In this document: positions 3,425 through 61,094 of the stretch, piece by piece
How positions within the stretch are numbered: position 1 is the first letter of the stretch
How the letters are laid out: the number at the start of each line of letters is the position of its first letter
IMG/VR virus record: IMGVR_UViG_3300042541_001760
Location: 197,053 to 261,052 of that record
DNA length: 64,000 nt
Strand: one strand, 5' to 3'
Position numbers and translations under genes: made by a program
Notes under the pieces: model-generated
What the model was told of the DNA's origin: nothing
Database searches by the model: none
What the model saw: the letters and a program-made list of their open reading frames with translations, nothing else

Positions 3425-3634
3425 ATGTTTGTTAAAAATAAAAATATTATGGAAAATATCGTAGAAACACTATTCGCAAAAGACAACTCAAAACCTGAAG
3501 GTGAGTGTAAAACATGTAAAAATAAAGTCAACCCGTTACAAAGTGGTTTAATTTGGTTCTCAGTTTGGATGTTAATAATGTCATTATATGGTCACGTAGT
3601 TTTTTTTAAAAAAATATTTGGTCTTATTTTTTAA
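3425..3634 (+). CDS. Small membrane protein with CxxC
   Basis: CKTC followed by a hydrophobic C-terminal helix; convergent with dnaJ. Confidence 0.55.
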   Translation: MFVKNKNIMENIVETLFAKDNSKPEGECKTCKNKVNPLQSGLIWFSVWMLIMSLYGHVVFFKKIFGLIF

Positions 3635-4568
3635 ATCTGACATTCAATCTGACATACATATCCCCTAACCCGTTGTTCCTGAACCCCTTTGATTTTAATC
3701 TTAGGGGTTTTGTTGTATCAAACTCATCTGGCATCTTAATAGCCAACTTACCATCAGGGTGTGGTATCTCAAAACTATCCGACTTTAACTCATCAAGATT
3801 AAAAAACTTATTGTATATGAGATCGTTATTAACCTTCTCAAAATCTTCCAATGGTTGGACATTAAATTTTATGAGTAAGTTACCATAACTACCATTTATA
3901 AAATCCCCTTTACCTTGAGCCTTAATGAATTGTCCATTATCAATTCCGTGAGGTATGGCAATATTAATTGAGTCCATCATATCTTTTGTTCCTGAACCAA
4001 CACAAGAGTGGCAGGTGGTCTTAAATGTAAATCCTCTACCACCACATCCATTACAAGCGGTTCTAACCATCTGAACAAACATACCGGTACCTACTCTTTG
4101 TGTTATTGATCCGGCGCCACCGCACATTCCACATTGTATCCTTTCTCCACCACTACCACTACAATCCTGACATTGGTGTTTTCTATTATATACTATATTT
4201 TTTTGAGCTGACTTATATGAATCCAATACACTTATATTAACATCAACCACTTTATCAGGGGCTTGTCTTTGTTGTTGTTGGGGATTACCTCCACGACCAC
4301 CACCGAAGAACTGAGCAAACAAATCTTCCATAGATCCACCTCCACCACCAAATCCTGCCATTGGGTTGTTTCTTTGGTTATCGTATCGTTTTCGTTTATT
4401 ATCGTCTCCAATCGTATCATAAGCCTGAGCAACCTCCTTGAATATATTCTCATCCCCTCCTTTATCGGGGTGATGCTCAACCGCTTTCTTCCTATACGCT
4501 TTTTTTATTTCATCTTGGGTTGCGGTTTCGGAAACTCCTAACACTTCATAATAATTGGGTTGTGCCAT
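3624..4568 (-). CDS. dnaJ: DnaJ/Hsp40 co-chaperone
   Basis: J-domain (NYYEVLGV...HHPDKGG), G/F-rich linker, four CxxCxGxG motifs, C-terminal substrate-binding domain. Confidence 0.97.
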   Translation of the reverse strand: MAQPNYYEVLGVSETATQDEIKKAYRKKAVEHHPDKGGDENIFKEVAQAYDTIGDDNKRKRYDNQRNNPMAGFGGGGGSMEDLFAQFFGGGRGGNPQQQQRQAPDKVVDVNISVLDSYKSAQKNIVYNRKHQCQDCSGSGGERIQCGMCGGAGSITQRVGTGMFVQMVRTACNGCGGRGFTFKTTCHSCVGSGTKDMMDSINIAIPHGIDNGQFIKAQGKGDFINGSYGNLLIKFNVQPLEDFEKVNNDLIYNKFFNLDELKSDSFEIPHPDGKLAIKMPDEFDTTKPLRLKSKGFRNNGLGDMYVRLNVRFKK

Positions 4569-10847: not shown

Positions 10848-11436
10848 ATCCTATTAGTTCGTTAAATTTGTTAAAGTCAAATGCTGGACTCACATCAGTA
10901 AATATCACATCAAAGTTGCTTTTCGTAACAATACCTTCAAATTTTTCAATTCCTTCAAATTTTGTGTTATGCCCGACACTTCTTTTATTAATGGAGTGTT
11001 CTCCCATTAGTTTAATACATAGTTCTGCGGTCTTATTCATTTGTATATCGGTATATGGTTGCCAAAAGAAATAATCTCTCCATTTTTTTTCAAATACCTT
11101 ATCTTTATAAATATTACCAATCCAATTAATGTGATGGTCCTTTAATGGTTCTTTTTGTAACCAACCAAGATTCTCCAAACATATGATAATTGAGTTCCTA
11201 TTAACATTATCTACCTTGAAGAAGTTTGAATGTTCTGTGTCCGACATTAGTTTTAGTATGGTACCTTCTCGACTAATTACGTAATTTGGTATCTTATCGT
11301 AGTTACCATTAGCCCTAAATTTAAGGGATGTTAAATATTCACCGATCTCACGGGAAGTATGGCACAGGATTATTTGTTTCTTCTTTTTTTGTTTACCCGT
11401 AGCCTTGAAATCACCATAACTAATTATTTCAAACAT
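10840..11436 (-). CDS. N-acetylmuramoyl-L-alanine amidase (Amidase_2-like), possibly degenerate
   Basis: IILCHT, NYVISREGTI, NRNSIIICLE, VGHN and DVSPAFDF follow the Amidase_2 motif order. Confidence 0.75.
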   Translation of the reverse strand: MFEIISYGDFKATGKQKKKKQIILCHTSREIGEYLTSLKFRANGNYDKIPNYVISREGTILKLMSDTEHSNFFKVDNVNRNSIIICLENLGWLQKEPLKDHHINWIGNIYKDKVFEKKWRDYFFWQPYTDIQMNKTAELCIKLMGEHSINKRSVGHNTKFEGIEKFEGIVTKSNFDVIFTDVSPAFDFNKFNELIGYE

Positions 11437-12304
11437 CTCGTTTTGAATAACTTAATCTTTTTATGTTGGTATCGTTAGATAATTGGTCTTTAAGTTCATC
11501 TAAGTTTTGATTCTCAACCACAATCTCTTCGGTATGTTCTTCATGTATTTCCTCTACCGTTGGTTCAACAATCTCTTCGGTATGTTCTTCATGTATTTCC
11601 TCTACCGTTGGTTCAACAATCTCTTCAACCACCTCATCTTCAACTACAATATCCTTCACCTTTTCTTCCTCACCGAATTTTTCTTTTTGAATCACATCAA
11701 GATGTTTCTCCAATTTTTCAATAGTTTCTATTGTTATAGCGGGGGTAATAGTATTTACTTCCCTCTCAATAATACCCGCCTTACGAGATATTTCATCTAT
11801 TTGTTCTTCCGTTAGTTCGGTTGCGGTTTCAGTTATGGTTTCTTTATTTGAATAAACCACTAACATATGAGCAAATGTTAAAGATATGATGGGTAGTAAT
11901 CCACCACTGAATAAAGCCAAAATTAATTTATGTGTTGGTATATTAGTTGGGTCAATACCCATAGGTTCAAATAAAGGTCCAGCCATCTCCATCCATTGTT
12001 TGAATGTCTCGGATGTTTCCTGTATGTATGAATATGAAAAGAATAGGTTACCCACGAATTGAATAAAGGTTACCAATATGAAGGGGAAATATATGAACCT
12101 ACCCATCTTTACTGACACACCGGCAAGGGCTGATAGTGCGGCAATCTCAACCGCAACAGAAAGATATATAGCCCAAGCAAAAGGGTTTGTAATACCATAG
12201 AATGAAGTTACGTGTGATATAGACACAAAGGCAACTAACAATATAGGTATTACAAACGCCGTGGCAATTATACTCTTAAGATTTTTTTGAATCCAATTTT
12301 TCAT
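11429..12304 (-). CDS. Multi-pass membrane protein with acidic repeated tail
   Basis: About four hydrophobic helices in the N-terminal half; Glu-rich C-terminus. Confidence 0.75.
   Translation of the reverse strand: MKNWIQKNLKSIIATAFVIPILLVAFVSISHVTSFYGITNPFAWAIYLSVAVEIAALSALAGVSVKMGRFIYFPFILVTFIQFVGNLFFSYSYIQETSETFKQWMEMAGPLFEPMGIDPTNIPTHKLILALFSGGLLPIISLTFAHMLVVYSNKETITETATELTEEQIDEISRKAGIIEREVNTITPAITIETIEKLEKHLDVIQKEKFGEEEKVKDIVVEDEVVEEIVEPTVEEIHEEHTEEIVEPTVEEIHEEHTEEIVVENQNLDELKDQLSNDTNIKRLSYSKRDV
11521..11626. repeat. 48-bp tandem repeat, 2.2 copies, in frame (EEIVEPTVEEIHEEHT)
   Basis: caatctcttcggtatgttcttcatgtatttcctctaccgttggttcaa at 11521 and 11569, partial copy at 11617. Confidence 0.97.
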
Positions 12305-12613: not shown

Positions 12614-13414
12614 TTACATATATTCAAAAAGAACCGAACTTTCATTTCGTAATTTACGAAGAGCCTTCTCTTTAATCTGTCTCACACGTTCTTTAGTAAG
12701 ATTGAAGTCGTCACCGATGTCCTCCAAAGTTCTTGGTGTCCCCGTTAGACCGAAATAATCCTCAATGATGGATCTCTCTCTTTTGTCCAAAATACCTAAC
12801 ACATCCATAAGTTTTTCTTTCAACTTATCTTTGGTATCAAAACCATCGTCAGGCATTACACAATTCTCATTTACGATTACATCAATAAGTGTATCTCCGT
12901 CTTCATTAATCTCGTCGTTAAGATTGACCATTGAAGGTAGTGAGGTGAACTTATCGGACAATTGCTTGCCATTGTTCTCAACCTCTTTTTTAGCTCGTTG
13001 TAGGTCTTGTACGACATTAACAGGGAGTCGTATGGTTCTTGCGTTCTCGTTAAGAGATTGGAGAATACATTGACGAACCCACCATACCGCATATGATATA
13101 AATCGTAGGTTCTTATTCCAATCAAAATTCTCAATGGCTTTAATCAATCCCATATTACCTTCGGCAATTAAATCGGGGAATGGTAATCCTTGATTCTGAT
13201 ATTGTTTTGCCACGGTAATAACAAAACGTAAATTACCTTCAACTAACTCCTGATGTATCTCATCTTTCTGTCTATCTGTTAGGTTTCCTGTGGCCATCAT
13301 AGCAGCCAACTCACGTTCTCTATCAGGTGTCATAACCTTAATCTTTCTTAGATCTTTAAGATAAGATTGAATCTCGTCTTGGTTGATCGGTATTCCTGTG
13401 TTTTTCTCTCTCAT
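12614..13414 (-). CDS. Sigma-70 family RNA polymerase sigma factor, Bacteroidota sigma-A-like
   Basis: Region 2 NLRFVITVAKQYQNQGL...FISYAVWWVRQ; region 4 TLEDIG...LTKERVRQIKEKALRKLR; no region 1.1. Confidence 0.95.
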   Translation of the reverse strand: MREKNTGIPINQDEIQSYLKDLRKIKVMTPDRERELAAMMATGNLTDRQKDEIHQELVEGNLRFVITVAKQYQNQGLPFPDLIAEGNMGLIKAIENFDWNKNLRFISYAVWWVRQCILQSLNENARTIRLPVNVVQDLQRAKKEVENNGKQLSDKFTSLPSMVNLNDEINEDGDTLIDVIVNENCVMPDDGFDTKDKLKEKLMDVLGILDKRERSIIEDYFGLTGTPRTLEDIGDDFNLTKERVRQIKEKALRKLRNESSVLFEYM

Positions 13415-16826: not shown

Positions 16827-19157
16827 TTATTGAGTAATCCTACTAATATTATTTTCTTTTGTGATTCTTATTACGTTGTCCGCCCAATTAGTGATTAGAG
16901 GATTGTGAGTTATGACGAATATCTTCTCAAAATAATCCTTAATCTTAACGAAGAATTCATATACCATATCTAAGTTGTCATTGGATATTTTACCGAACAC
17001 CTCATCCATAACATTTATATTAGGTTTTGGTAATGAACATACCTTACTTAATACCGATCTTAATGCTAGTGAAGCAATCGTCTTTTCATACCCACTACCT
17101 GATGACATCAACTTCTCTACCTGAGTATCGTTATCAATCATAATAAACTCAACTTCATTCTTATCGTTGATTCTGACTTCAAGTTTGAACTGACAACTAT
17201 CTTCCAATAATCTTTGTAACTCAGAATTAATAATTGGTATCATTGTTTTCATAATCAACTTTGATATACCGTTCTTACCATAGACCTCCAAATAAAGTTT
17301 ATAATACTTTTCTCTTTCTGACTCTTCGGATATCTTTTGAATAAGTGTCATATTTTCCACAATCTTATTATTAAGAGTTTGAGTTTGATATGTTAGATTC
17401 GTTATCTCCCTATCTATCTTATTCTCTTCCATATTAAGTTCGTCCATACGGATGTTCGCCTTAATTATCTGACTTTCAATTTTAAGGTTCTGTTCAATCT
17501 TGGTTTGAATTTGATTATACCGGTTTAACTTGTCCTTAATCGCATCAATTTTAAGATTATTACTTTCAATATTAACCTCGTATTTCTCTTTGATTAACTT
17601 GTTTTTCTCGTATTCATTAAACTCTTTCTTAAGTTGAACGAAACCCTTCTCTTTGCCCGATAAATCAAGCATTAACTCGGTTATTTGACCATAATGCTGG
17701 TTATATGAGGCAAGTTCCCCCAATTTTGTCTTGGTAATTTCCGCATTTAATAACTCAATTCCGCAGTGTTCACACTTGATTCCACCCGATACAGATTTCG
17801 CCAACTCATTAAGGTTTGCGATTTTGGTTTCCGTTTCAATCTTCTTAACAAGTTGTTCGTTATACTCTTCCTTTACCTTGTCGTGTTTGTCCTCGTGATA
17901 AAATGAGGATGGTTCAACAACATTAATCTTGGATAGGTCTTCAATTAACTTTTTATTGGTATAGTCAATCTGTGTGATGTCCTCGTTAAGTTTGGTTGGA
18001 TTAAGGATGGCAATTGCGTTGTCAATGTCATTATGTTTCTGAGAAACTAATCCATCTCTATAGTCCTGACCCTTCTTAATTCTTCCCTTAACATCCTCCA
18101 ATTGTTCTTGGTGTTTTATTAGGGTTTCATTGTTTTCGGTAATCTTTGTCTTGGCCGATTCAATATCCTGTTTCAATTGTTCGGTGTTATAAACATTGGA
18201 CAACATAGATTTTGAATATTTACTATACAAATCTTTACCTATCTCCTCTTTTTTCTTTAGAGATTCCAAACCAAGAAACCTTGATAATACCTGACCCCTT
18301 GCGGTTGGTTTGGCGTCAATTAAATCCTCCAAATTAGATCCTGTGGTTAGAATGGTTGTTAAGAAGTCGTCCATCTCACCGATTGATGTTTTGATAAACT
18401 TTTCTGTCTCAACTCTTTGTTCCCCCGTGAAATTCTGTAAACTTCCGTCGGACAACTTTTTAAAGAAGTCCAACGTAGTTTTTACATTCCATTCACCGGC
18501 TTTTGACATTTTTCTCTCAATGGTTCTGATAATCAAATAGTTATCACCATCAATCATAATATCACCACGAACTGACACCTTGTTCTTATCTGTAAATCTA
18601 TTAAAGATTTCTTCTGCCTTTTGCGTCTTTGTTGTCGTGTTAAAGAATAGGAATAGTAATAAGTCAACGGTAAGGACGGTCTTACCCCCAAAATTAGGTG
18701 GATTTGATTCTACAACGGTAATACCATTACATAAGTCAAAATCAATCACCTGATCCTCACCATACGATAAGAAATTGGAGAACTCTATCTTTTTAACAAA
18801 CCACTTCTTAAATGGTGTTACTTCGGACTGGTCTAATACCAATTCATTCTCAACTTGGGCATCAATTCTCAATACCTCCGGTAGATAATCCTCTGCCGAT
18901 TTTGAGATTAGAAAGTTCTTCATCAACTCCTGTTGATAATTTTTATCCAAGATGTTAAACGATATGTCAACCGATTGAGTCGTATCCTCCGATGTCTTAA
19001 CCTTAGTTATAACATTAACATTATTTGAAGCGTATTTTTTTTGGAAGTATTGTTTTACACTTTTGATTTTCTCTTGTGTGAAATTCTCAGGTGCATCTTC
19101 CCACACCACTTTGACGTAGGGATTCTCCAATTCGGATATATCCAAATTATGTTTCAT
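16827..19157 (-). CDS. SbcC/Rad50/gp46-like ABC ATPase with an extra N-terminal domain
   Basis: KIEFSNFLSYG, P-loop variant NPPNFGGKT, coiled coil with CEHC hook, signature variant SGSGYE, MDEVFG and ITHN. ATG 19157 preferred over track start 19241. Confidence 0.92.
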   Translation of the reverse strand: MKHNLDISELENPYVKVVWEDAPENFTQEKIKSVKQYFQKKYASNNVNVITKVKTSEDTTQSVDISFNILDKNYQQELMKNFLISKSAEDYLPEVLRIDAQVENELVLDQSEVTPFKKWFVKKIEFSNFLSYGEDQVIDFDLCNGITVVESNPPNFGGKTVLTVDLLLFLFFNTTTKTQKAEEIFNRFTDKNKVSVRGDIMIDGDNYLIIRTIERKMSKAGEWNVKTTLDFFKKLSDGSLQNFTGEQRVETEKFIKTSIGEMDDFLTTILTTGSNLEDLIDAKPTARGQVLSRFLGLESLKKKEEIGKDLYSKYSKSMLSNVYNTEQLKQDIESAKTKITENNETLIKHQEQLEDVKGRIKKGQDYRDGLVSQKHNDIDNAIAILNPTKLNEDITQIDYTNKKLIEDLSKINVVEPSSFYHEDKHDKVKEEYNEQLVKKIETETKIANLNELAKSVSGGIKCEHCGIELLNAEITKTKLGELASYNQHYGQITELMLDLSGKEKGFVQLKKEFNEYEKNKLIKEKYEVNIESNNLKIDAIKDKLNRYNQIQTKIEQNLKIESQIIKANIRMDELNMEENKIDREITNLTYQTQTLNNKIVENMTLIQKISEESEREKYYKLYLEVYGKNGISKLIMKTMIPIINSELQRLLEDSCQFKLEVRINDKNEVEFIMIDNDTQVEKLMSSGSGYEKTIASLALRSVLSKVCSLPKPNINVMDEVFGKISNDNLDMVYEFFVKIKDYFEKIFVITHNPLITNWADNVIRITKENNISRITQ

Positions 19158-19167
19158 GTTTTCGTAA

Positions 19168-19359
19168 TTAAAGTTCTTGGGCGGATTGAATAAGTCCAGT
19201 GTCTTCCGTGTCACCAGATGGTGTTGTTTTGAGTTCCTCAAGTTGTTTTGCCATTAATTGTTCAAATGATTTTTGGAAATGTGCTTTTTCGGCGCCGATT
19301 CTCTGAGTTCTTGCCTTTGATTTCGCTTTGTGGTTTTTTCTGTTTTTAGATGTTGGCAT
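19168..19359 (-). CDS. Small basic protein
   Basis: 63 aa, K/R-rich N-terminus (MPTSKNRKNHKAKSKARTQR). Confidence 0.6.
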   Translation of the reverse strand: MPTSKNRKNHKAKSKARTQRIGAEKAHFQKSFEQLMAKQLEELKTTPSGDTEDTGLIQSAQEL

Positions 19360-19732: not shown

Positions 19733-20131
19733 TTATAATATTGATTTTATATTTGAACCTGAGTGGTAAACTGCTCCTCGTGATAATACCACGTCTTTAA
19801 AGTGGTTTGCCATTTCCTCAAGTTGGTTTATTTTTTCGTCTCTTAATGATAATTCTTTTTTTAATACCTGTAAAGTACCCTCCAACAATTTAATCTTTGT
19901 TTCGTCACAAGGTTTATCAACAACCCTCTCCACAATCTTTTCAACCTCAATCTCAATTACTTCAGGTTCTTTACCATTAATAAGACCATATTTATCTATC
20001 GCATATCCCTTCTTAAAGCAATATTGGATATACTTTTGAACGTCATCTATATTGTTTAATTTACAGAATATGTTTACGTTTTTCAGATCACTATCTGAAA
20101 TTTTAATGATTGACAAGTCGTTCTGTTCCAT
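19733..20131 (-). CDS. Hypothetical coiled-coil protein
   Basis: 132-aa ORF in the operon. Confidence 0.65.
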   Translation of the reverse strand: MEQNDLSIIKISDSDLKNVNIFCKLNNIDDVQKYIQYCFKKGYAIDKYGLINGKEPEVIEIEVEKIVERVVDKPCDETKIKLLEGTLQVLKKELSLRDEKINQLEEMANHFKDVVLSRGAVYHSGSNIKSIL

Positions 20132-20882
20132 CTACTAAATTATCTATTGAATCTATCTTGAATGATAGAAATGGTTTAGGGTTTTTTAAATCCACAAATT
20201 CGTATTTATCTTCCTTCACATTGTAAATTCCGTACCCGTGTTTTTTTATGGTCTCACCATAGTTCTGTTGGATTGTTGACCCAACCATATACGCCTTCTT
20301 ACCTCCAGGGATGTCAAATACTTGTCGTTTGTGAATATCCCCACATAAAACTAAATCACACCCACCGAACTTATCTGACTCAAACCCTGAATCAAATTTA
20401 TACCCAATATCGGTTGTTAATCCTTGTACCGGTCCGTGAAATAATCCAATATTTAATTTACCATTTTTAGGTATCTCAGGTGGTATGTTATGGTCAATCA
20501 ATGAATATACACACCAATTGATGTTATCATCCTCATGTGTCCCTCTATTCTTATAATAAACAATGTTTTGATTGTCTAATGAATCAATAATGGGAGTTAG
20601 AGCGTCTAATCTAGATTGATTAGACTCCAAAAAATCGTGATTACCAATGATTACAATTGTTTTGGCAATCTTTGAACATTCTGTTAATACCCAAACCACA
20701 AACTCAATAAGTTCGGGTGTCATTTGGTTCTTTGAATGTACGAGGTCTCCTGTGAAAACAATTCTGTCGGGGGTAACATCTCCCCATTGTTTAAACATAT
20801 CTTTCAATATTGACTTATACAAATCGTGATCCTTGAATAGTCGTATGTGTAAATCTGAGAAGTGTATTAATTTATCAATCAT
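20103..20882 (-). CDS. SbcD/Mre11/gp47-like metallophosphoesterase nuclease
   Basis: SDLH, TGDLVH, GNHD, FHGP and GDIH motifs; likely start MIDKLIHFSDLH at 20882. Confidence 0.92.
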   Translation of the reverse strand: MIDKLIHFSDLHIRLFKDHDLYKSILKDMFKQWGDVTPDRIVFTGDLVHSKNQMTPELIEFVVWVLTECSKIAKTIVIIGNHDFLESNQSRLDALTPIIDSLDNQNIVYYKNRGTHEDDNINWCVYSLIDHNIPPEIPKNGKLNIGLFHGPVQGLTTDIGYKFDSGFESDKFGGCDLVLCGDIHKRQVFDIPGGKKAYMVGSTIQQNYGETIKKHGYGIYNVKEDKYEFVDLKNPKPFLSFKIDSIDNLVDGTERLVNH

Positions 20883-21147
20883 ATCTTTCGTATTTATCTC
20901 CCGTATCTTGGTCTCCGTTGTGGAATATGATTTTAGGTCCTTCCGGTTTATATGGATGTGTGTTCCAATTCTCACCAAGTAATTCTCTTTTATTATCCAA
21001 AAAATTATCCCTATCCCGTTTAATAATGTTGGATGTTTCTGAAACCTCTTTCATCTTTTCCTTTATAGTTTCAAGGTCTTTCTCAACAACCCACTCTCGG
21101 TTTGTCATAAATCCATCTAGCCAAACATAAAACTCCTTATGTGTCAT
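20875..21147 (-). CDS. Hypothetical protein
   Basis: 90-aa ORF with overlapping start/stop junctions on both sides. Confidence 0.65.
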   Translation of the reverse strand: MTHKEFYVWLDGFMTNREWVVEKDLETIKEKMKEVSETSNIIKRDRDNFLDNKRELLGENWNTHPYKPEGPKIIFHNGDQDTGDKYERYD

Positions 21148-21383: not shown

Positions 21384-22151
21384 TTATTTTTTAGTTGTTT
21401 CTAACATTAATTTCAATTCTGCGGTTAAATCCTTACAAGGAAAAATCTTGTAGTTATCATTAACCTCATTTATCCACACAAGATAAAGATTACCTATTTT
21501 TAGATTGGTGTTCTTCTCTATGATGTGTTTGTAAAGGTGTAGTTGTAAAGAATAAGTATTTATTTCACAAACGTCAATATGTGATATAGGTGATTTGAAA
21601 TTCTCCCTATACACACTCTTTAGTTTTATCTCCTTATTTGTCTTATAGTCATATATTTCCAACATACCAGACTTTTTATTATAGAATAAACAATCCACCA
21701 TTCCCGCAATTCCGTAGTCCTCATCCGCAACCACAAACTCCATCTTAACAGGAATCAGATTAGTTTTGGCATCATTATAGAATCTCTCAAATATTGTTAC
21801 ACACTTCTCAAATTTTTCTTTGATAATGTCCGTCCCAAATTTCTTTATAGAAACAGACGGATCGTATGGGAACACTTTATTATACCAAAAGTTCTCTGCG
21901 TAATTGTGAACCATTGACCCCTTTACGGTGGATATATCTCTCTTTAAATCCCACTCATTGATAACATCCTCAACCATAAGACCTCTCTTATCAGCATAGG
22001 TTTGAGCCATATTCTCGGTATCAAACTTATTTTTGAATTTACCGATGAATGTGGTGGCACTTGTGAATTCCCGATTACCTGCGTAATATTTGTGGGGTTC
22101 GTCATAATACTTTATATGACTAAACTTATTTAACTCTAAAATTGTATCCAT
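21384..22151 (-). CDS. PD-(D/E)XK (RecB/lambda-like) exonuclease
   Basis: KGSMVH, AGMVDCLF, IYDYKT and YSLQLHLYK motifs. Confidence 0.88.
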   Translation of the reverse strand: MDTILELNKFSHIKYYDEPHKYYAGNREFTSATTFIGKFKNKFDTENMAQTYADKRGLMVEDVINEWDLKRDISTVKGSMVHNYAENFWYNKVFPYDPSVSIKKFGTDIIKEKFEKCVTIFERFYNDAKTNLIPVKMEFVVADEDYGIAGMVDCLFYNKKSGMLEIYDYKTNKEIKLKSVYRENFKSPISHIDVCEINTYSLQLHLYKHIIEKNTNLKIGNLYLVWINEVNDNYKIFPCKDLTAELKLMLETTKK

Positions 22152-55668: not shown

Positions 55669-56346
55669 TTACTTTGTTTTTGGTTTTACAATTTCATCAA
55701 TTATTCCGTATTCTAAACTTTCTTCCGCTGACAACCATAGGTCACGACTTGCGTCTTCCATTACTTGTTTAGCATCTTTACCACAATATCCACCCAAAAG
55801 TTCAAAAAGGATGTTGTTTGTTTTTTCCCACTCAACCATTGAGATACGAGCGTCTTGGATATTACCTTCTAATCCACCACTTGATTGGTGTAACATTGTT
55901 CGTGAGAATCTCAATGATGATCTCATTCCCTTTGTTCCTGCTCCCAACAATACTGAACCCATTGATGCCGCCATCCCTGTGTTGATTGTCGCAATTGGTG
56001 CGGTAATATATTCCATAACATCAACCATACTCAATCCTGCCTTAACAGACCCACCAGGCGAATCAATGTGCATTGTAATTGGTTTCTTTGGGTCTTGTTG
56101 ATCTAAGAATAGAAGTTGTGCTTGGACGATTGTTGACATATGGTCATTAACAGTTCCTGCTACCCAAAGGATACGATCCATCATCAATCTTGAAAAGATA
56201 TCAATTTGTGTTGCTCGTAACTCTCGTTCCTCCAAAATATATGGAGTCATACTACTTTTAACTCCTGATTGGAATTTTTGGTATTGGTGTAATGTGTTTG
56301 AACCGATACCTTTACCTTTAATGGCATATTTTTCAAATTCTGTCAT
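55669..56346 (-). CDS. clpP: ClpP protease subunit
   Basis: IDSPGGSV, catalytic AASMG, MLHQ, RDLWLSAEE. Confidence 0.96.
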   Translation of the reverse strand: MTEFEKYAIKGKGIGSNTLHQYQKFQSGVKSSMTPYILEERELRATQIDIFSRLMMDRILWVAGTVNDHMSTIVQAQLLFLDQQDPKKPITMHIDSPGGSVKAGLSMVDVMEYITAPIATINTGMAASMGSVLLGAGTKGMRSSLRFSRTMLHQSSGGLEGNIQDARISMVEWEKTNNILFELLGGYCGKDAKQVMEDASRDLWLSAEESLEYGIIDEIVKPKTK

Positions 56347-58673: not shown

Positions 58674-59549
58674 TTAGAATGGCATGTCCTCGTCGGGTGC
58701 CGACTCTGCCTGTGGGTCAGGAGTTTTCTCCACTTTACCACTTGATGATTTTGATTTACCTCCGATTACTGTTTCATCCACGGTAGAATCACTATAAGCG
58801 TATTTACCTGCGTCTGAGTCCCATCTTGGAGTTTCTCCACGAGCAATCGCTTCAAGATACTCTACGGGTTTTTTAGAATAAACGTCAGCCCAAGTTAGTT
58901 CGTCTTCAACCCAAGATTTAAGGGTATCTTCGTTATCACTAATAGGTTGTGGGTCGTCATACATAACCGCTTGGATTACCGTGTAATAAGAACCATTGTT
59001 TGTCTTTGACTTTGTTAGTTCAAGAATCAAATCTCTACCTTTTTGTGGGTCTGTAACATCACCTTTTGCTCTCCAAATTGGAATGATTTTGTCAAGGATA
59101 CCCTCTTTTTTGTAGTTGTGTTTGAAACGCCAGAATTTAACTCCGTCCTGCTCTGCGTCTCGGTCAATTACCTTTACAATGTAAAACATACGAGATCGGT
59201 AGTTACCCGCCAATTTCTTATCCGCTTCTTTACCTGTTGACATAAGGTCTTCAAAAACCTCGTTAAGTGGTGATCTTTCGTTGTCGTTTTTTCCTGGATC
59301 GTAAAGTTTAATCCATTTACCGTCAACTTGAACTTCGTGAAACCATACTTCTTTGAAAGGTGATGACCCGTCAGCGGTTGGTAGGATACGAATTCGTTTT
59401 TGTCCTTGTTTTTCTTTATCGCTTAGAATTGCCGCGAAATACTTCTTCATTCTATCATCTTGTGACATCTTTGATGTTGAAGATGAGCTTGATTTTTGTG
59501 TCTGTTCGTACTGTGCCAGTACCGCATCCATAGTGTTTGTTGTCGCCAT
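58674..59549 (-). CDS. gp32-like single-stranded DNA-binding protein
   Basis: IRILP, EVWFH, YIVKVIDRD, KGRDL and an acidic tail ending DEDMPF. Confidence 0.85.
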   Translation of the reverse strand: MATTNTMDAVLAQYEQTQKSSSSSTSKMSQDDRMKKYFAAILSDKEKQGQKRIRILPTADGSSPFKEVWFHEVQVDGKWIKLYDPGKNDNERSPLNEVFEDLMSTGKEADKKLAGNYRSRMFYIVKVIDRDAEQDGVKFWRFKHNYKKEGILDKIIPIWRAKGDVTDPQKGRDLILELTKSKTNNGSYYTVIQAVMYDDPQPISDNEDTLKSWVEDELTWADVYSKKPVEYLEAIARGETPRWDSDAGKYAYSDSTVDETVIGGKSKSSSGKVEKTPDPQAESAPDEDMPF

Positions 59550-59584: not shown

Positions 59585-59612
59585 ATTATAGGTGATTTTG
59601 TGAATTTGTCAA
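59585..59612 (-). promoter_or_regulatory. Consensus sigma70-type promoter TTGACA-N16-TATAAT upstream of SSB
   Basis: Both hexamers are exact on the minus strand, 35 nt upstream of the ATG. Confidence 0.7.
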
Positions 59613-59615
59613 ACG

Positions 59616-59649
59616 AAAAAGGGTATGAATTTTTAGTTTCATACCCTTT
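59616..59649 (-). terminator. Intrinsic terminator closing the paralogue array
   Basis: Perfect 12-bp stem AAAGGGTATGAA/TTCATACCCTTT with an 8-nt loop and T run. Confidence 0.85.
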
Positions 59650-59712
59650 AATTATAGTGATATATTTTTAATTAATCTAATGTTTTAATCCTCTTCCAAT
59701 CCTAAACGATGA

Positions 59713-60024
59713 TTATTGCCGAGAATCAAGTGGCATCACTCCCCTTAAATCATAAGACTTATCCAACCAATGTCCTAAAATTGATTTAGTTTCACGGGGC
59801 TTAAGACGAAATAACAATTCAAGTATTAACCAAATACGACCATAATCAATAAAAACCCATTCATTTTCTTTATCATATTCCATAACCATATTATCATTGG
59901 AATCAACATATAATATTAAGTTAGGATAACCTTTATGTTTTTTTAATGTTAAGTTACCATAGTGTATATTTAGCCACTTGATAACTACTCTTTCTAACTG
60001 ATTTTTATTTACCTGTATGTCCAT
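59713..60024 (-). CDS. Array paralogue 4 (103 aa)
   Basis: MDIQVNKNQLERVVIKWL...WLDKSYDLRGVMP plus a variable tail. Confidence 0.85.
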   Translation of the reverse strand: MDIQVNKNQLERVVIKWLNIHYGNLTLKKHKGYPNLILYVDSNDNMVMEYDKENEWVFIDYGRIWLILELLFRLKPRETKSILGHWLDKSYDLRGVMPLDSRQ

Positions 60025-60033
60025 AAGTTAATC

Positions 60034-60175
60034 CTCTTCCAACTAAATTCACACTTTTAATATTTGCTTGTATGGTGTTACTCCCTCTAATTTGTAAGAC
60101 TCTTCCAACGGTGCTTAATACACCTGAAATTGCTTGAAGGGTGTTACTCCCTCTAATTTGTAAGACTCTTCCAAC
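60034..60175 (-). repeat. CRISPR-like mini-array: two identical 36-nt repeats plus a partial third, 30-nt spacers
   Basis: GTTGGAAGAGTCTTACAAATTAGAGGGAGTAACACC at 60140-60175 and 60074-60109; GTTGGAAGAG again at 60034-60043; spacers 60110-60139 and 60044-60073. The repeat is certain; CRISPR function is not shown. Confidence 0.95.
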
Positions 60176-60432
60176 CAAACCTTAATAATTGATTGAGTAT
60201 CTCTGTAGTTAAGATAAAATAGTGATTCAATTTTTAACCAAATTTGACCATAATTAATATAAACACGCTCAGTTTTCTTATCGTATTCCATCATAACTTC
60301 ATTACTTGGATTAACGTAAAATACTGAGTTAACGTAACCATTACGCTTCTTTGGTGTTAAGTTACCAAAGTGTTTATCTAGCCACTTGATAACTACTCTT
60401 TCTAACTGATGTTTATTCACCTGTATGTTCAT
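60115..60432 (-). CDS. Array paralogue 3 (105 aa)
   Basis: MNIQVNKHQLERVVIKWL...WLEESYKLEGVTP plus a variable tail. Confidence 0.85.
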   Translation of the reverse strand: MNIQVNKHQLERVVIKWLDKHFGNLTPKKRNGYVNSVFYVNPSNEVMMEYDKKTERVYINYGQIWLKIESLFYLNYRDTQSIIKVWLEESYKLEGVTPFKQFQVY

Positions 60433-60435
60433 AAG

Positions 60436-60771
60436 TTAATCCTCTTCAAACTTCATTAAACTACCAACCAATTGTAGAAGCGTTACTCCCTCCAAATTAT
60501 AAGTATCTTTCAACCATAAATTAATAATTGAATGAATTTCACCATATTTAAGGTGAAATAATGATTCAATCATTAACCAAATACGGGATTCACTAACCCA
60601 AAGATAGTTGTTTTTTTTATCGTAACCCATTAAAACCTCGTTATCTGAATTTACGTAAAATAATACATTAGGATTATCTTTACGTTTCTTTGGTGTTAAA
60701 TTACCGAAGTTTTTGTTTAACCACTTGATAACTATCCTCTCTAACTGCTCCTTATTTACCTGTATATCCAT
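60436..60771 (-). CDS. Array paralogue 2 (111 aa)
   Basis: MDIQVNKEQLERIVIKWL...WLKDTYNLEGVT-LLQLVGSLMK-FEED. Confidence 0.85.
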   Translation of the reverse strand: MDIQVNKEQLERIVIKWLNKNFGNLTPKKRKDNPNVLFYVNSDNEVLMGYDKKNNYLWVSESRIWLMIESLFHLKYGEIHSIINLWLKDTYNLEGVTLLQLVGSLMKFEED

Positions 60772-60788: not shown

Positions 60789-61094
60789 TCAAGCGTAGTC
60801 TGGTGTTACTCCACTCAATTTATAGGTCTCCTCCAACCATATCTTCATAATTGATTTAATGTCATCATACTTTAGGTGAAATATAGATTCAATTTTTGAC
60901 CAAACATATCTATAATGAATATAAACACTATCAGTTTCCTTATCGTATTCCATTACAACCTTATTATCTGAGTTTACGTATAATACGTAGTTAGGATTAT
61001 TTTTATGTTTCTTTTGTGTTAAGTTACCATAGTATAAGTTTAACCACTTAATAACAACTCTATCCAATTGATTTTTATCTACCTGTATGTCCAT
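60789..61094 (-). CDS. Array paralogue 1 (101 aa)
   Basis: MDIQVDKNQLDRVVIKWL...WLEETYKLSGVTP plus a short tail. Confidence 0.85.
   Translation of the reverse strand: MDIQVDKNQLDRVVIKWLNLYYGNLTQKKHKNNPNYVLYVNSDNKVVMEYDKETDSVYIHYRYVWSKIESIFHLKYDDIKSIMKIWLEETYKLSGVTPDYA

What the first reader, a model, noticed from the sequence alone, without database searches (positions are those of the whole stretch)
60034..60175. Exact 36-nt repeat / 30-nt spacer unit embedded in a gene 3' end (CRISPR-acquisition-like geometry)
Seen: on the minus strand, repeat (36 nt), spacer (30 nt), identical repeat, spacer (30 nt), then a partial repeat starting at the same G, giving a strict 66-nt period. The first repeat encodes LEESYKLEGVTP of paralogue 3. 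The two full copies match 36/36 with sharp borders, while the same block in the three sister genes differs at 8, 8 and 10 of 36 positions. Established: Cas1-Cas2 integration duplicates the repeat exactly, and 36/30-nt dimensions are typical of type VI-B and many type II systems found in Bacteroidota. From memory, type VI-B repeats also begin GTTG(G). Inference: this may be a phage mini-array or repeat mimic fed by a host integrase in trans, or an unknown fixed-length insertion system. Against: the repeat has little self-complementarity, no cas gene or anti-repeat is seen here, and the two spacers share CAAGCAA at the same offset (11/30 identical), which also fits duplication followed by rapid divergence.
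Basis: partly seen in the sequence, partly recalled or inferred. Interest (0 to 1): 0.9.

Follow-up and report, generated by a model that had tools for sequence, protein, structure and literature searches.

The report
CRISPR-like mini-array inside phage gene
The last 36 bases of a small, many-copy gene of an uncultured freshwater jumbo phage act as the repeat of a CRISPR-style repeat–spacer array: relatives carry one to five unrelated 29–30-base inserts of foreign-looking DNA there. No cas gene, host repeat or spacer target was found, so what builds the arrays is unknown.

Summary
Two exact 36-nt copies lie at 60140-60175 and 60074-60109 (- strand), each followed by 30 nt. A 15-nt truncated third copy (60029-60043) runs into the start region of the next paralogue.

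A relative first suggested an orphan gene end left by recombination. Wider comparison does not support that as the whole story. Across 88 related phage loci I found 48 distinct arrays in the same place:
- They hold 1-5 spacers: 74 unique, of 29, 30 or 31 nt, plus one of 33.
- Internal repeats are mostly exact, and the last repeat is degenerate.
- Near-identical genes carry unrelated first spacers but share last spacers.
- Spacers have higher GC than the phage DNA and lack its strong GpC depletion, yet are TpA-depleted like natural DNA.

The best reading is a CRISPR-type acquisition array whose first repeat is the coding 3' end of the gene.

Not shown:
- No cas gene in the window or array flanks.
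- No such repeat in 185,579 prokaryote genomes.
- No protospacer, repeat hairpin or anti-repeat.

The integrase, the host and the function are inferred or unknown. I file it as a new variant of viral mini-arrays, and of high interest.

The parts
60115..60432 (-). Paralogue 3 (105 aa) of a small phage protein family. Its last 12 conserved codons are repeat 1, and its last 7 codons and stop lie in spacer 1. The gene body is in the position of an array leader.
   Evidence: ORF and alignment. AF2 model has pLDDT 92, and the repeat encodes the end of the last helix plus EGVTP. The family has 1028 cluster representatives, none annotated.
60140..60175 (-). Repeat 1 (36 nt). It is gene-proximal, coding, and the presumed site where new units are added.
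   Evidence: Exact copy. In relatives the variable end of the arrays is this end.
60110..60139 (-). Spacer 1 (30 nt), found only in this phage lineage. It supplies FKQFQVY and the stop codon.
   Evidence: An IMG/VR scan finds it only in the three identical contigs. It is absent from the close relatives L004 and L017.
60074..60109 (-). Repeat 2 (36 nt), identical to repeat 1 and lying after the stop codon, so untranslated.
60044..60073 (-). Spacer 2 (30 nt), the older unit. The same sequence follows a para2-like gene in L017 (29/30) and the para3 orthologue in L004 (24/30).
60029..60043 (-). Truncated terminal repeat (15 nt, GTTGGAAGAGGATTA), joined to ACTT-ATG of paralogue 4.
   Evidence: The same junction precedes other paralogues (family D3).
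59713..60024 (-). Paralogue 4 (103 aa). It has its own diverged unit: repeat 59732-59767 (10/36 different), a 30-nt spacer at 59702-59731, and a degenerate terminal repeat from 59701 down to about 59666.
60436..60771 (-). Paralogue 2 (111 aa). Its repeat-homologous block is 60479-60514 (8/36 different), followed by 27 nt and a short repeat-like stretch, TTTGAAGAGGAT.
60789..61094 (-). Paralogue 1 (101 aa). Its repeat-homologous block is 60802-60837 (8/36 different), with no clear second repeat.
59618..59649 (-). Intrinsic-terminator-like hairpin that closes the paralogue and array transcription unit.
   Evidence: The same hairpin follows the last array in L004, L005, L006 and L017.
59585..59612 (-). 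Perfect sigma-70-type promoter match (TTGACA-16-TATAAT) in front of the gp32-like SSB gene (58674-59549). This is context, not part of the array.

Best explanation
This is a CRISPR-type repeat-spacer mini-array nested in the 3' end of a phage gene.

Shown:
- The 36 nt that encode the end of the last helix of a small (~100 aa) phage protein serve as the repeat.
- Units of one repeat plus a 29-30-nt spacer sit between the gene and the start of the next paralogue.
- Across relatives, the end of the array next to the gene body varies while the far end is conserved.
- The spacers do not carry the phage's own compositional signature.

Inferred:
- A ruler-type integrase of the Cas1-Cas2 kind inserts short pieces of foreign DNA at the gene-proximal repeat and duplicates that repeat. 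It would be supplied in trans, either by the host or from elsewhere in the ~261-kb phage genome.
- Repeat-repeat recombination deletes units and keeps the first ~21-24 nt of the terminal repeat matched to the gene's own repeat.
- Homologous recombination among paralogues moves whole gene-array modules.

In the window, spacer 1 is the recent gain and spacer 2 is an old unit shared with relatives.

The function is not shown. My ranking is:
1. A decoy acceptor that soaks up the host's spacer integration, or a source of crRNA-like RNAs that use or jam a host effector.
2. Diversification of the protein's C-terminal tail.
3. Tolerated scars of off-target integration.
For: - Geometry across relatives: 48 distinct arrays and 74 unique spacers (38 of 29 nt, 32 of 30 nt, 3 of 31 nt, 1 of 33 nt). 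26 of 33 internal repeat pairs are identical over 36 nt. The terminal repeat matches 21.6/24 at its start but only 26.6/36 overall (arrays listed).
- Polarity: L083 and L085 have 100% identical 186-nt leader plus repeat and share their two last spacers. They differ in the gene-proximal ones (1 versus 3). L026/L033 and L020/L025 show the same pattern, and no reverse case was seen.
- Wholesale turnover: of 31 array pairs with at least 90% identical leader plus repeat, 28 have unrelated first spacers, 3 have the same one, and none is intermediate. This includes tandem gene copies in one genome that are 99.5% identical.
- Spacers within an array are no more alike than spacers from different arrays.
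- Repeat variants come in blocks: in L038, R1=R2 differ by 1 nt from R3=R4, and L064 and L086 are similar. This is as expected if new repeats are copied from the first one.
- Foreign composition: spacer GC is 38.1% against 31.9% for phage 30-mers (p=1.7e-8). Spacer GpC odds ratio is 1.10 against 0.55±0.10 for phage 30-mer sets (0 of 2000 sets reach it). TpA is 0.75 against 1.02 in shuffled spacers (0 of 2000), so the spacers look like natural DNA but not like this phage.
- Not a protein repeat: half the spacers are 29 nt. These shift the frame into a stop inside the next repeat, so the later exact repeats are untranslated.
- The terminal repeat tracks its own gene's repeat whatever the reading frame (0 of 5000 permutations; protein-level pairs).
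- The gene-array link is old. It holds in clades only 34-38% identical in protein and in L087.
- In-trans adaptation of cas1/2-less arrays with 36-bp repeats is documented in F. columnare (PMC8092290). Off-target integration that founds new arrays is also reported (Nivala 2018, as cited in bioRxiv 10.1101/148544).
Against: - No cas gene was found among window ORFs of at least 250 aa, several smaller ones, or the array flanks in L057, L064, L078, L080 and L085.
- No bacterial or archaeal genome among 185,579 species carries this repeat or such an array.
- No protospacer was found. The searches covered 4 spacers against IMG/VR, 74 spacers against 467 kb of related phage DNA, and four arrays against GenBank phages.
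- The repeat does not fold (z=0.44), matches no Rfam CRISPR-DR family, and has no anti-repeat nearby.
- Repeats of paralogues in one genome differ at 8-10 of 36 positions. A sequence-specific Cas machinery would have to tolerate that.
- The first repeat is ordinary coding sequence, with most variation at third codon positions.
- First spacers are depleted in in-frame stops: 8/45 against 17/45 in each of the other two phases (p=0.02). In L087 all spacers are 30 nt and translated. Protein-level selection therefore also acts on the arrays.
- The window's own two spacers share a 7-mer at the same offset. Only 0.34% of spacer pairs do that, which hints at common descent for this particular pair.
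Confidence: 0.6

Rival explanations
1. Recombination accordion only. The variable 30-mers are diverged C-terminal tails of paralogues. Out-of-register crossovers between the short repeat-like junction in front of each gene and the coding repeat of another paralogue stack orphan 3' ends. Deletions then remove them. No integrase or foreign DNA is involved.
For: - In L017 the two exact 36-mers sit 342 nt apart in adjacent full paralogues, which share an identical ~90-nt block. This indicates gene conversion.
- The window's spacer 2 is the native tail of one of those genes (29/30) and of the para3 orthologue in L004 (24/30).
- The same tail is attached to different gene bodies.
- The phage encodes UvsX-like, gp32-like and 5'-3' exonuclease recombination functions right next to the cluster.
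- The window's spacers 1 and 2 share CAAGCAA at the same offset.
Against: - The spacers carry a non-phage GC content and dinucleotide signature.
- There are 74 unique spacers in 48 arrays, with almost no sharing.
- Spacer length is strictly 29-31 nt, and no intermediate divergence is seen.
- Turnover is polarised in every informative comparison.
- Gene copies in one genome that are 99.5% identical have wholly different spacer sets.
- Spacers within an array are unrelated to each other.
Confidence: 0.2
2. Protein-level tandem repeat. A 22-residue repeat (12 conserved plus 10 hypervariable residues) forms a variable C-terminal extension or inter-domain linker, and evolves under diversifying selection and unequal crossing-over.
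For: - The repeat encodes part of the folded domain.
- Many family members read through one or two units.
- First spacers are depleted in in-frame stops.
- In L087 five domains and their units form one 760-aa ORF in which all spacers are 30 nt.
Against: - About half of all spacers are 29 nt. These shift the frame so that the next repeat contains a stop, yet downstream repeats stay exact. In L085 the first two spacers are 29 nt and three more units follow.
- The same nucleotide repeat is kept whether it is read as LEE.YKL or as WKRLTNW.
- Variable segments are replaced wholesale and have a foreign composition.
Confidence: 0.08
3. Simple 66-nt tandem duplication in this one phage, followed by divergence of the 30-nt part.
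For: The units are adjacent and in frame, and the two spacers are 11/30 identical with a shared 7-mer.
Against: - There are 0/36 changes in the repeat against 19/30 in the spacer, although repeat 2 is untranslated.
- Spacer 2 predates the event, since it is present without spacer 1 in L004 and L017.
- The same architecture, with unrelated spacers, recurs in dozens of lineages.
Confidence: 0.04

Closest known systems
Viral CRISPR mini-arrays (archaeal viruses SPV1/SPV2 and many phages), as summarised in PMC11656645
   Same: They are short repeat-spacer arrays carried by a virus without cas genes. The window has two spacers. They are presumed to rely on machinery supplied in trans.
   Different: - Known mini-arrays have repeats identical to the host's CRISPR, and most of their spacers hit related viruses. 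Here no prokaryote genome has the repeat and no target was found.
- Here the first repeat is the coding 3' end of a conserved gene.
- The gene-array module is multi-copy, in tandem and at several loci per genome.
- Arrays reach five spacers.
Cas-poor CRISPR loci of metagenomic jumbo phages, lacking adaptation and/or interference genes (as described in PMC11656645)
   Same: The contigs are jumbo phages (95-309 kb) from metagenomes, and the arrays have no visible adaptation module.
   Different: No cas gene at all is seen near any array. The arrays lie inside mRNAs and overlap ORFs. Whether a cas locus exists elsewhere in the 261-kb genome could not be checked.
In-trans adaptation of a cas1/2-less type VI-B array by type II-C machinery in Flavobacterium columnare (PMC8092290)
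   Same: Both have 36-bp repeats and acquisition by an array that lacks its own integrase, despite different leader and repeat sequences. [quoted passage not shown]
   Different: No sequence comparison with real VI-B or II-C repeats could be made. The repeat has no hairpin and the host is unknown. This resemblance is a lead only.
Neo-CRISPR arrays founded by off-target Cas1-Cas2 integration (Nivala et al. 2018, as cited in bioRxiv 10.1101/148544)
   Same: An ordinary genomic sequence becomes 'the repeat' because the integrase duplicates a fixed length next to a leader-like site. That would explain why the repeat here is plain coding sequence.
   Different: Neo-CRISPR arrays were seen in the E. 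coli chromosome under forced expression. Here the association is conserved across a whole, deeply diverged phage gene family, which argues for maintenance rather than accident.
Shuffling of gene modules through short repeated sequences in T4-type phages (PeSL cassettes; from my own knowledge, not checked here)
   Same: Short conserved sequences flank variable cassettes in tandem small-gene regions of large recombination-proficient phages. Module shuffling is seen here too (L017 versus the window).
   Different: PeSL shuffling moves whole genes. It does not create fixed-length, foreign-composition inserts with exact repeat duplication.

Membership tests
CRISPR array (generic) | Direct repeats of constant length, near-identical within an array | tested here: met
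   Repeats are 36 nt. The window pair is 36/36 identical, and 26 of 33 internal pairs in relatives are identical.
CRISPR array (generic) | Unique spacers of near-constant length | tested here: met
   74 unique spacers: 38 of 29 nt, 32 of 30 nt, 3 of 31 nt, 1 of 33 nt. Pairs within an array are unrelated.
CRISPR array (generic) | Polarised turnover: one end variable, the other conserved, with a degenerate terminal repeat | tested here: met
   L083/L085, L026/L033 and L020/L025 share last spacers and differ in first spacers. The terminal repeat matches 26.6/36 overall but 21.6/24 at its start.
CRISPR array (generic) | Spacers derive from foreign nucleic acid (protospacers exist) | tested here: inconclusive
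   Spacer composition is non-phage but natural-looking. No protospacer was found in IMG/VR (4 spacers), related loci (74 spacers) or GenBank phages.
CRISPR array (generic) | cas genes (at least cas1-cas2) in the same genome | tested here: not met
   None was found in the window or in array flanks by Pfam or NCBIfam. The remaining ~200 kb of the phage genome and the host could not be examined.
CRISPR array (generic) | Non-coding locus preceded by a non-coding leader | tested here: not met
   The first repeat encodes the conserved peptide LEE.YKLEGVTP, and the 'leader' is an ORF with a confident fold.
Viral mini-CRISPR array | Repeats identical to those of the host's CRISPR system | tested here: not met
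   Two degenerate scans of 185,579 species genomes gave 0 hits. The host is unknown and may be unsequenced.
Viral mini-CRISPR array | Most spacers target related viruses | tested here: not met
   There were no matches in 467 kb of related phage loci beyond homologous arrays. Four spacers scanned against IMG/VR hit only themselves. The searches were limited.
Type II / type VI-B repeats of Bacteroidota | 36-nt repeat with ~30-nt spacers | tested here: met
   The 36-bp figure for F. columnare II-C and VI-B comes from PMC8092290.
Type II / type VI-B repeats of Bacteroidota | Repeat hairpin (VI-B), or a tracrRNA anti-repeat (II) | tested here: not met
   The repeat's fold energy is no better than that of shuffles. 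No complementary stretch beyond chance was found in the window or in ±4 kb of 14 loci. No Rfam CRISPR-DR family matches the repeat.
Type II / type VI-B repeats of Bacteroidota | Sequence similarity to known repeats, and a Bacteroidota host | not testable with these tools
   No repeat library was at hand. The only host hints are weak SprB-repeat matches and distant gp32 hits to Flavobacterium, Bacillus and cyanophages.
Orphan gene 3' end left by paralogue recombination | The orphan unit equals the 3' end of a full paralogue in relatives | tested here: met
   This holds for spacer 2 only: L017 1908-1973 and L004 3358-3423.
Orphan gene 3' end left by paralogue recombination | Variable segments have the genome's own composition and diverge gradually | tested here: not met

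The most novel reading that the evidence does not exclude
A self-contained 'gene plus array' module of freshwater jumbo phages. The 3' end of a small protein gene is a dedicated acceptor site for fixed-length pieces of foreign DNA. A machinery not yet recognised as Cas would insert them, or the phage would deliberately capture the host's Cas1-Cas2. The phage would use the module either as a spacer sink that blunts host CRISPR adaptation, or as a generator of new C-terminal tails on a multi-copy effector protein. The second use would be a CRISPR-style diversity generator acting on a protein.
Probability: 0.25. Interest if true: 0.95.

Novelty: new variant of a known kind. Interest (0 to 1): 0.8.

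Why it matters
Virus-borne mini-arrays are known, but they copy the host's repeat and are non-coding. In this case a whole phage protein family carries arrays whose repeat is its own coding 3' end. The family has about 1000 sequence clusters, several tandem copies per locus and several loci per genome. The spacers come from somewhere other than the phage.

If an integrase really feeds these sites, three things follow:
- Phage genomes keep a record of DNA they met.
- Phages may divert or exploit host adaptation in a new way.
- Spacer integration can rewrite the end of a protein.

The finding also makes a concrete question testable: which enzyme recognises this leader-like gene end and measures 36 plus 29-30 nt?

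Tried and rejected
- Orphan 3' end from a microhomology deletion. This was my first reading after L017. I kept it only as a secondary process once multi-spacer arrays, polarity and foreign composition appeared.
- Assembly artefact. Rejected, because identical arrays occur in independent samples.
- Known RNA family. No Rfam match at the repeat.
- Repeat hairpin. None.
- Host repeat mimic. Two genome-collection scans were empty.
- Protospacers. None was found in IMG/VR, in local loci (one search timed out), or in GenBank phages. The few hits had E of 0.03-0.3 and fell in repeats or were at chance level.
- cas genes or an integrase. None by Pfam or NCBIfam. The PD-(D/E)XK nuclease at 21384-22151 has no Cas4 match.
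- Function of the protein. There are no Pfam, PHROG or NCBIfam hits and no PDB fold match. The only BFVD matches are uncharacterised freshwater phage paralogues.
- Anti-repeat or tracrRNA. None.
- Literature. The repeat strings do not occur in the searchable library, and the real VI-B and II-C repeat sequences could not be retrieved from text.
- One IMG/VR scan was wasted on a miscounted gap and repeated correctly.
- P0228, a 1443-aa hit, is an unrelated repeat protein.

Full report
**What is in the window**

On the minus strand, four tandem paralogues of a ~100-aa protein lie between a 229-aa ORF and a gp32-like SSB gene. They are at 60789-61094, 60436-60771, 60115-60432 and 59713-60024, and are 55-59% identical to the first. 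The wider window is from a large phage. It encodes UvsX-like, DnaB-like, RNR, baseplate, sigma-70, DnaJ and ClpP genes.

The finding sits at the end of paralogue 3. An exact 36-nt sequence occurs twice (60140-60175 and 60074-60109), and each copy is followed by 30 nt. A third copy is cut after 15 nt (60029-60043) and runs into ACTT-ATG of paralogue 4. No shuffle of the window gives even one match with up to 3 mismatches.

The first copy encodes LEESYKLEGVTP. The gene's stop lies in the first 30-mer. The second unit is in frame but untranslated. Three IMG/VR contigs from different samples, one of them 261 kb, carry the identical structure.

**First reading and why it was not enough**

In the relative L017 the two exact 36-mers lie 342 nt apart in two adjacent full paralogues. 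The window's second 30-mer (29/30) is the natural tail of the first of these. In L004 the para3 orthologue ends with the same tail (24/30) and has no extra unit. That looked like an orphan gene end stacked by out-of-register recombination.

The family as a whole shows something more regular, however. In 120 homologues the conserved W-LEE.YKLEGVTP is followed by about 10 unrelated residues. Then comes a second copy of the same nucleotides, read either in frame (LEE.YKL) or shifted by one base (WKRLTNW). The second copy tracks the first within each gene, whichever frame it is read in. A permutation test on DNA confirms the tracking: 0 of 5000 permutations reach the observed value.

**Arrays in relatives**

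I collected 88 related loci:
- IMG/VR loci found with the protein alignment and with DNA patterns
- a metagenome scan
- contigs encoding selected proteins

These hold 48 distinct arrays at the same position, and 21 of them have two to five spacers. The main features are:
- There are 74 unique spacers: 38 of 29 nt, 32 of 30 nt, 3 of 31 nt and 1 of 33 nt.
- 26 of 33 internal repeat pairs are identical over all 36 nt.
- The last repeat keeps its first ~21-24 nt (21.6/24 identical) and then diverges into the stop and start signals of the next gene or the cluster's terminator (26.6/36 overall).
- Several consecutive genes can each carry an array: three in L057 and two in L064.
- The same arrays recur in independent samples: L064, L077 and L081 match, as do L076, L078, L082 and L084.

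The association holds in clades whose proteins are only 34-38% identical to the window's and whose repeat differs. It also holds in a 42%-GC phage, where five domains and their arrays are fused into one 760-aa ORF.

**Dynamics**

- L083 and L085 have 100% identical 186 nt of gene end plus first repeat, and they share their two last spacers. Next to the gene, L083 has one different spacer and L085 has three. L026/L033 and L020/L025 behave the same way, and no pair shows the reverse.
- Of 31 array pairs with at least 90% identical gene end plus repeat, 28 have unrelated first spacers, 3 have the same one, and none is intermediate. This includes two copies in one genome that are 99.5% identical.
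- Spacers of one array are no more alike than spacers of different arrays.
- Repeat variants occur in blocks: in L038, R1=R2 differ by one base from R3=R4, and L064 and L086 are similar. This is as expected if new repeats are copied from the gene-proximal one.

**Origin of the spacers**

- Spacers have 38.1% GC, against 31.9% for random 30-mers of the same loci, 28.6% for the gene bodies, and 33.2% for stop-free phage 30-mers (p=1.7e-8).
- Spacers lack the coding-strand skew.
- The phage DNA is strongly GpC-depleted (odds ratio 0.55±0.10 in sets of 74 30-mers), whereas the spacers give 1.10. None of 2000 phage sets reaches that value. CC/GG and CpG differ in the same sense.
- Spacers are TpA-depleted (0.75, against 1.02±0.05 in shuffles, 0 of 2000), like natural DNA.

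The spacers are therefore real biological sequence from a source other than these phages. This is the main argument against simple drift of gene tails and against reshuffling among paralogues alone.

**Coding aspects**

The AF2 model is confident (pLDDT 92). The repeat encodes the end of the last helix plus EGVTP. Repeat variation is highest at third codon positions, so the first repeat is a genuine part of the gene.

The arrays are not a protein repeat. A 29-nt spacer shifts the frame so that the next repeat contains a stop, yet later repeats remain exact; L085, for example, has spacers of 29, 29, 30, 30 and 30 nt.

Translation does seem to matter for the first unit. Only 8 of 45 first spacers contain an in-frame stop, against 17 of 45 in each other phase (p=0.02). 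In L087 every spacer is in frame.

**What was not found**

- cas genes or an integrase in the window or array flanks.
- This repeat, or any such array, in one genome of each of 185,579 prokaryote species.
- An Rfam family at the repeat, a repeat fold, or an anti-repeat.
- A protospacer.
- A literature record of the repeat.
- A function or solved fold for the protein.
- Relatives among GenBank phages. The host is unknown, because gp32 is only 26-32% identical to Bacillus, Flavobacterium and cyanophage proteins.

**Interpretation**

The anatomy and dynamics are those of a CRISPR array: exact fixed-length repeats, unique fixed-length spacers of foreign composition, gain at one end, and a degenerate last repeat. 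The most likely mechanism is insertion by a ruler-type integrase at the gene-proximal repeat, with duplication of 36 nt.

Repeat-repeat deletion and paralogue recombination would then account for the tracking terminal repeat and for the L017-type arrangements. The integrase step is an inference.

Two precedents exist:
- Arrays that lack cas1/2 and are fed in trans, with 36-bp repeats (PMC8092290).
- Off-target integration that turns ordinary sequence into a repeat.

Against membership in the known class of viral mini-arrays, two defining features fail in the tests I could run: a host-identical repeat, and spacers that target related viruses (PMC11656645). The locus works like a CRISPR array, but I file it as a new variant rather than a member.

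**The window's array**

Spacer 2 is old and shared with relatives. Spacer 1 is lineage-specific and supplies the present C-terminus and stop of paralogue 3. The shared 7-mer between the two, a 0.34% event among spacer pairs, is unexplained. It could be chance, selection on the encoded tail ([F/Y]KQ), or common descent of this one pair.

Noticed in passing
all related loci and the window: The phage DNA is strongly depleted in the dinucleotide GpC (odds ratio 0.55) and enriched in CC/GG (1.40). This may reflect avoidance of restriction sites.
   Followed up: partly
window 11520-11626: A perfect 48-nt tandem repeat (2.2 copies, 100% identical) lies inside the unannotated ORF 11429-12304 (-).
   Followed up: no
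L017 1651-1968 and 1993-2346: Two adjacent paralogues share an identical ~90-nt 3' block ending exactly at the repeat, while their bodies and tails differ. This is a gene-conversion tract.
   Followed up: partly
L087 3001-5283: In a 148-kb, 42%-GC phage contig, five copies of the domain and their repeat-spacer units are fused into a single 760-aa ORF. All spacers there are 30 nt and free of stops.
   Followed up: partly
first spacers of 45 arrays: In-frame stop codons are depleted in the first spacer: 8/45 against 17/45 in each other phase (p=0.02). This suggests selection on the translated tail or on translational coupling to the next gene.
   Followed up: partly
window 21384-22151 (-), 20103-20978 (-), 16827-19241 (-): A PD-(D/E)XK nuclease lies next to SbcD- and SbcC-like genes. 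It has no Cas4 match and none of the cysteine-cluster motif typical of Cas4 is evident in the translation.
   Followed up: partly
window 12614-13414, 3624-4568, 55669-56346: The phage encodes its own sigma-70 family factor, a full DnaJ and a ClpP protease.
   Followed up: no
L020 408-842; L022 1561-1995: An SmpB-like gene (tmRNA partner) lies close to the gene-array modules in related phage contigs.
   Followed up: no
window 59585-59649 (-): A strong terminator-like hairpin is followed at once by a perfect TTGACA-16-TATAAT promoter match in front of the gp32-like gene. The hairpin is conserved after the last array in L004, L005, L006 and L017.
   Followed up: partly
L038 426-760; L064 3774-3990; L086 530-760: Within arrays, single-base repeat variants occur in contiguous blocks, with the newer block next to the gene.
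   Followed up: partly
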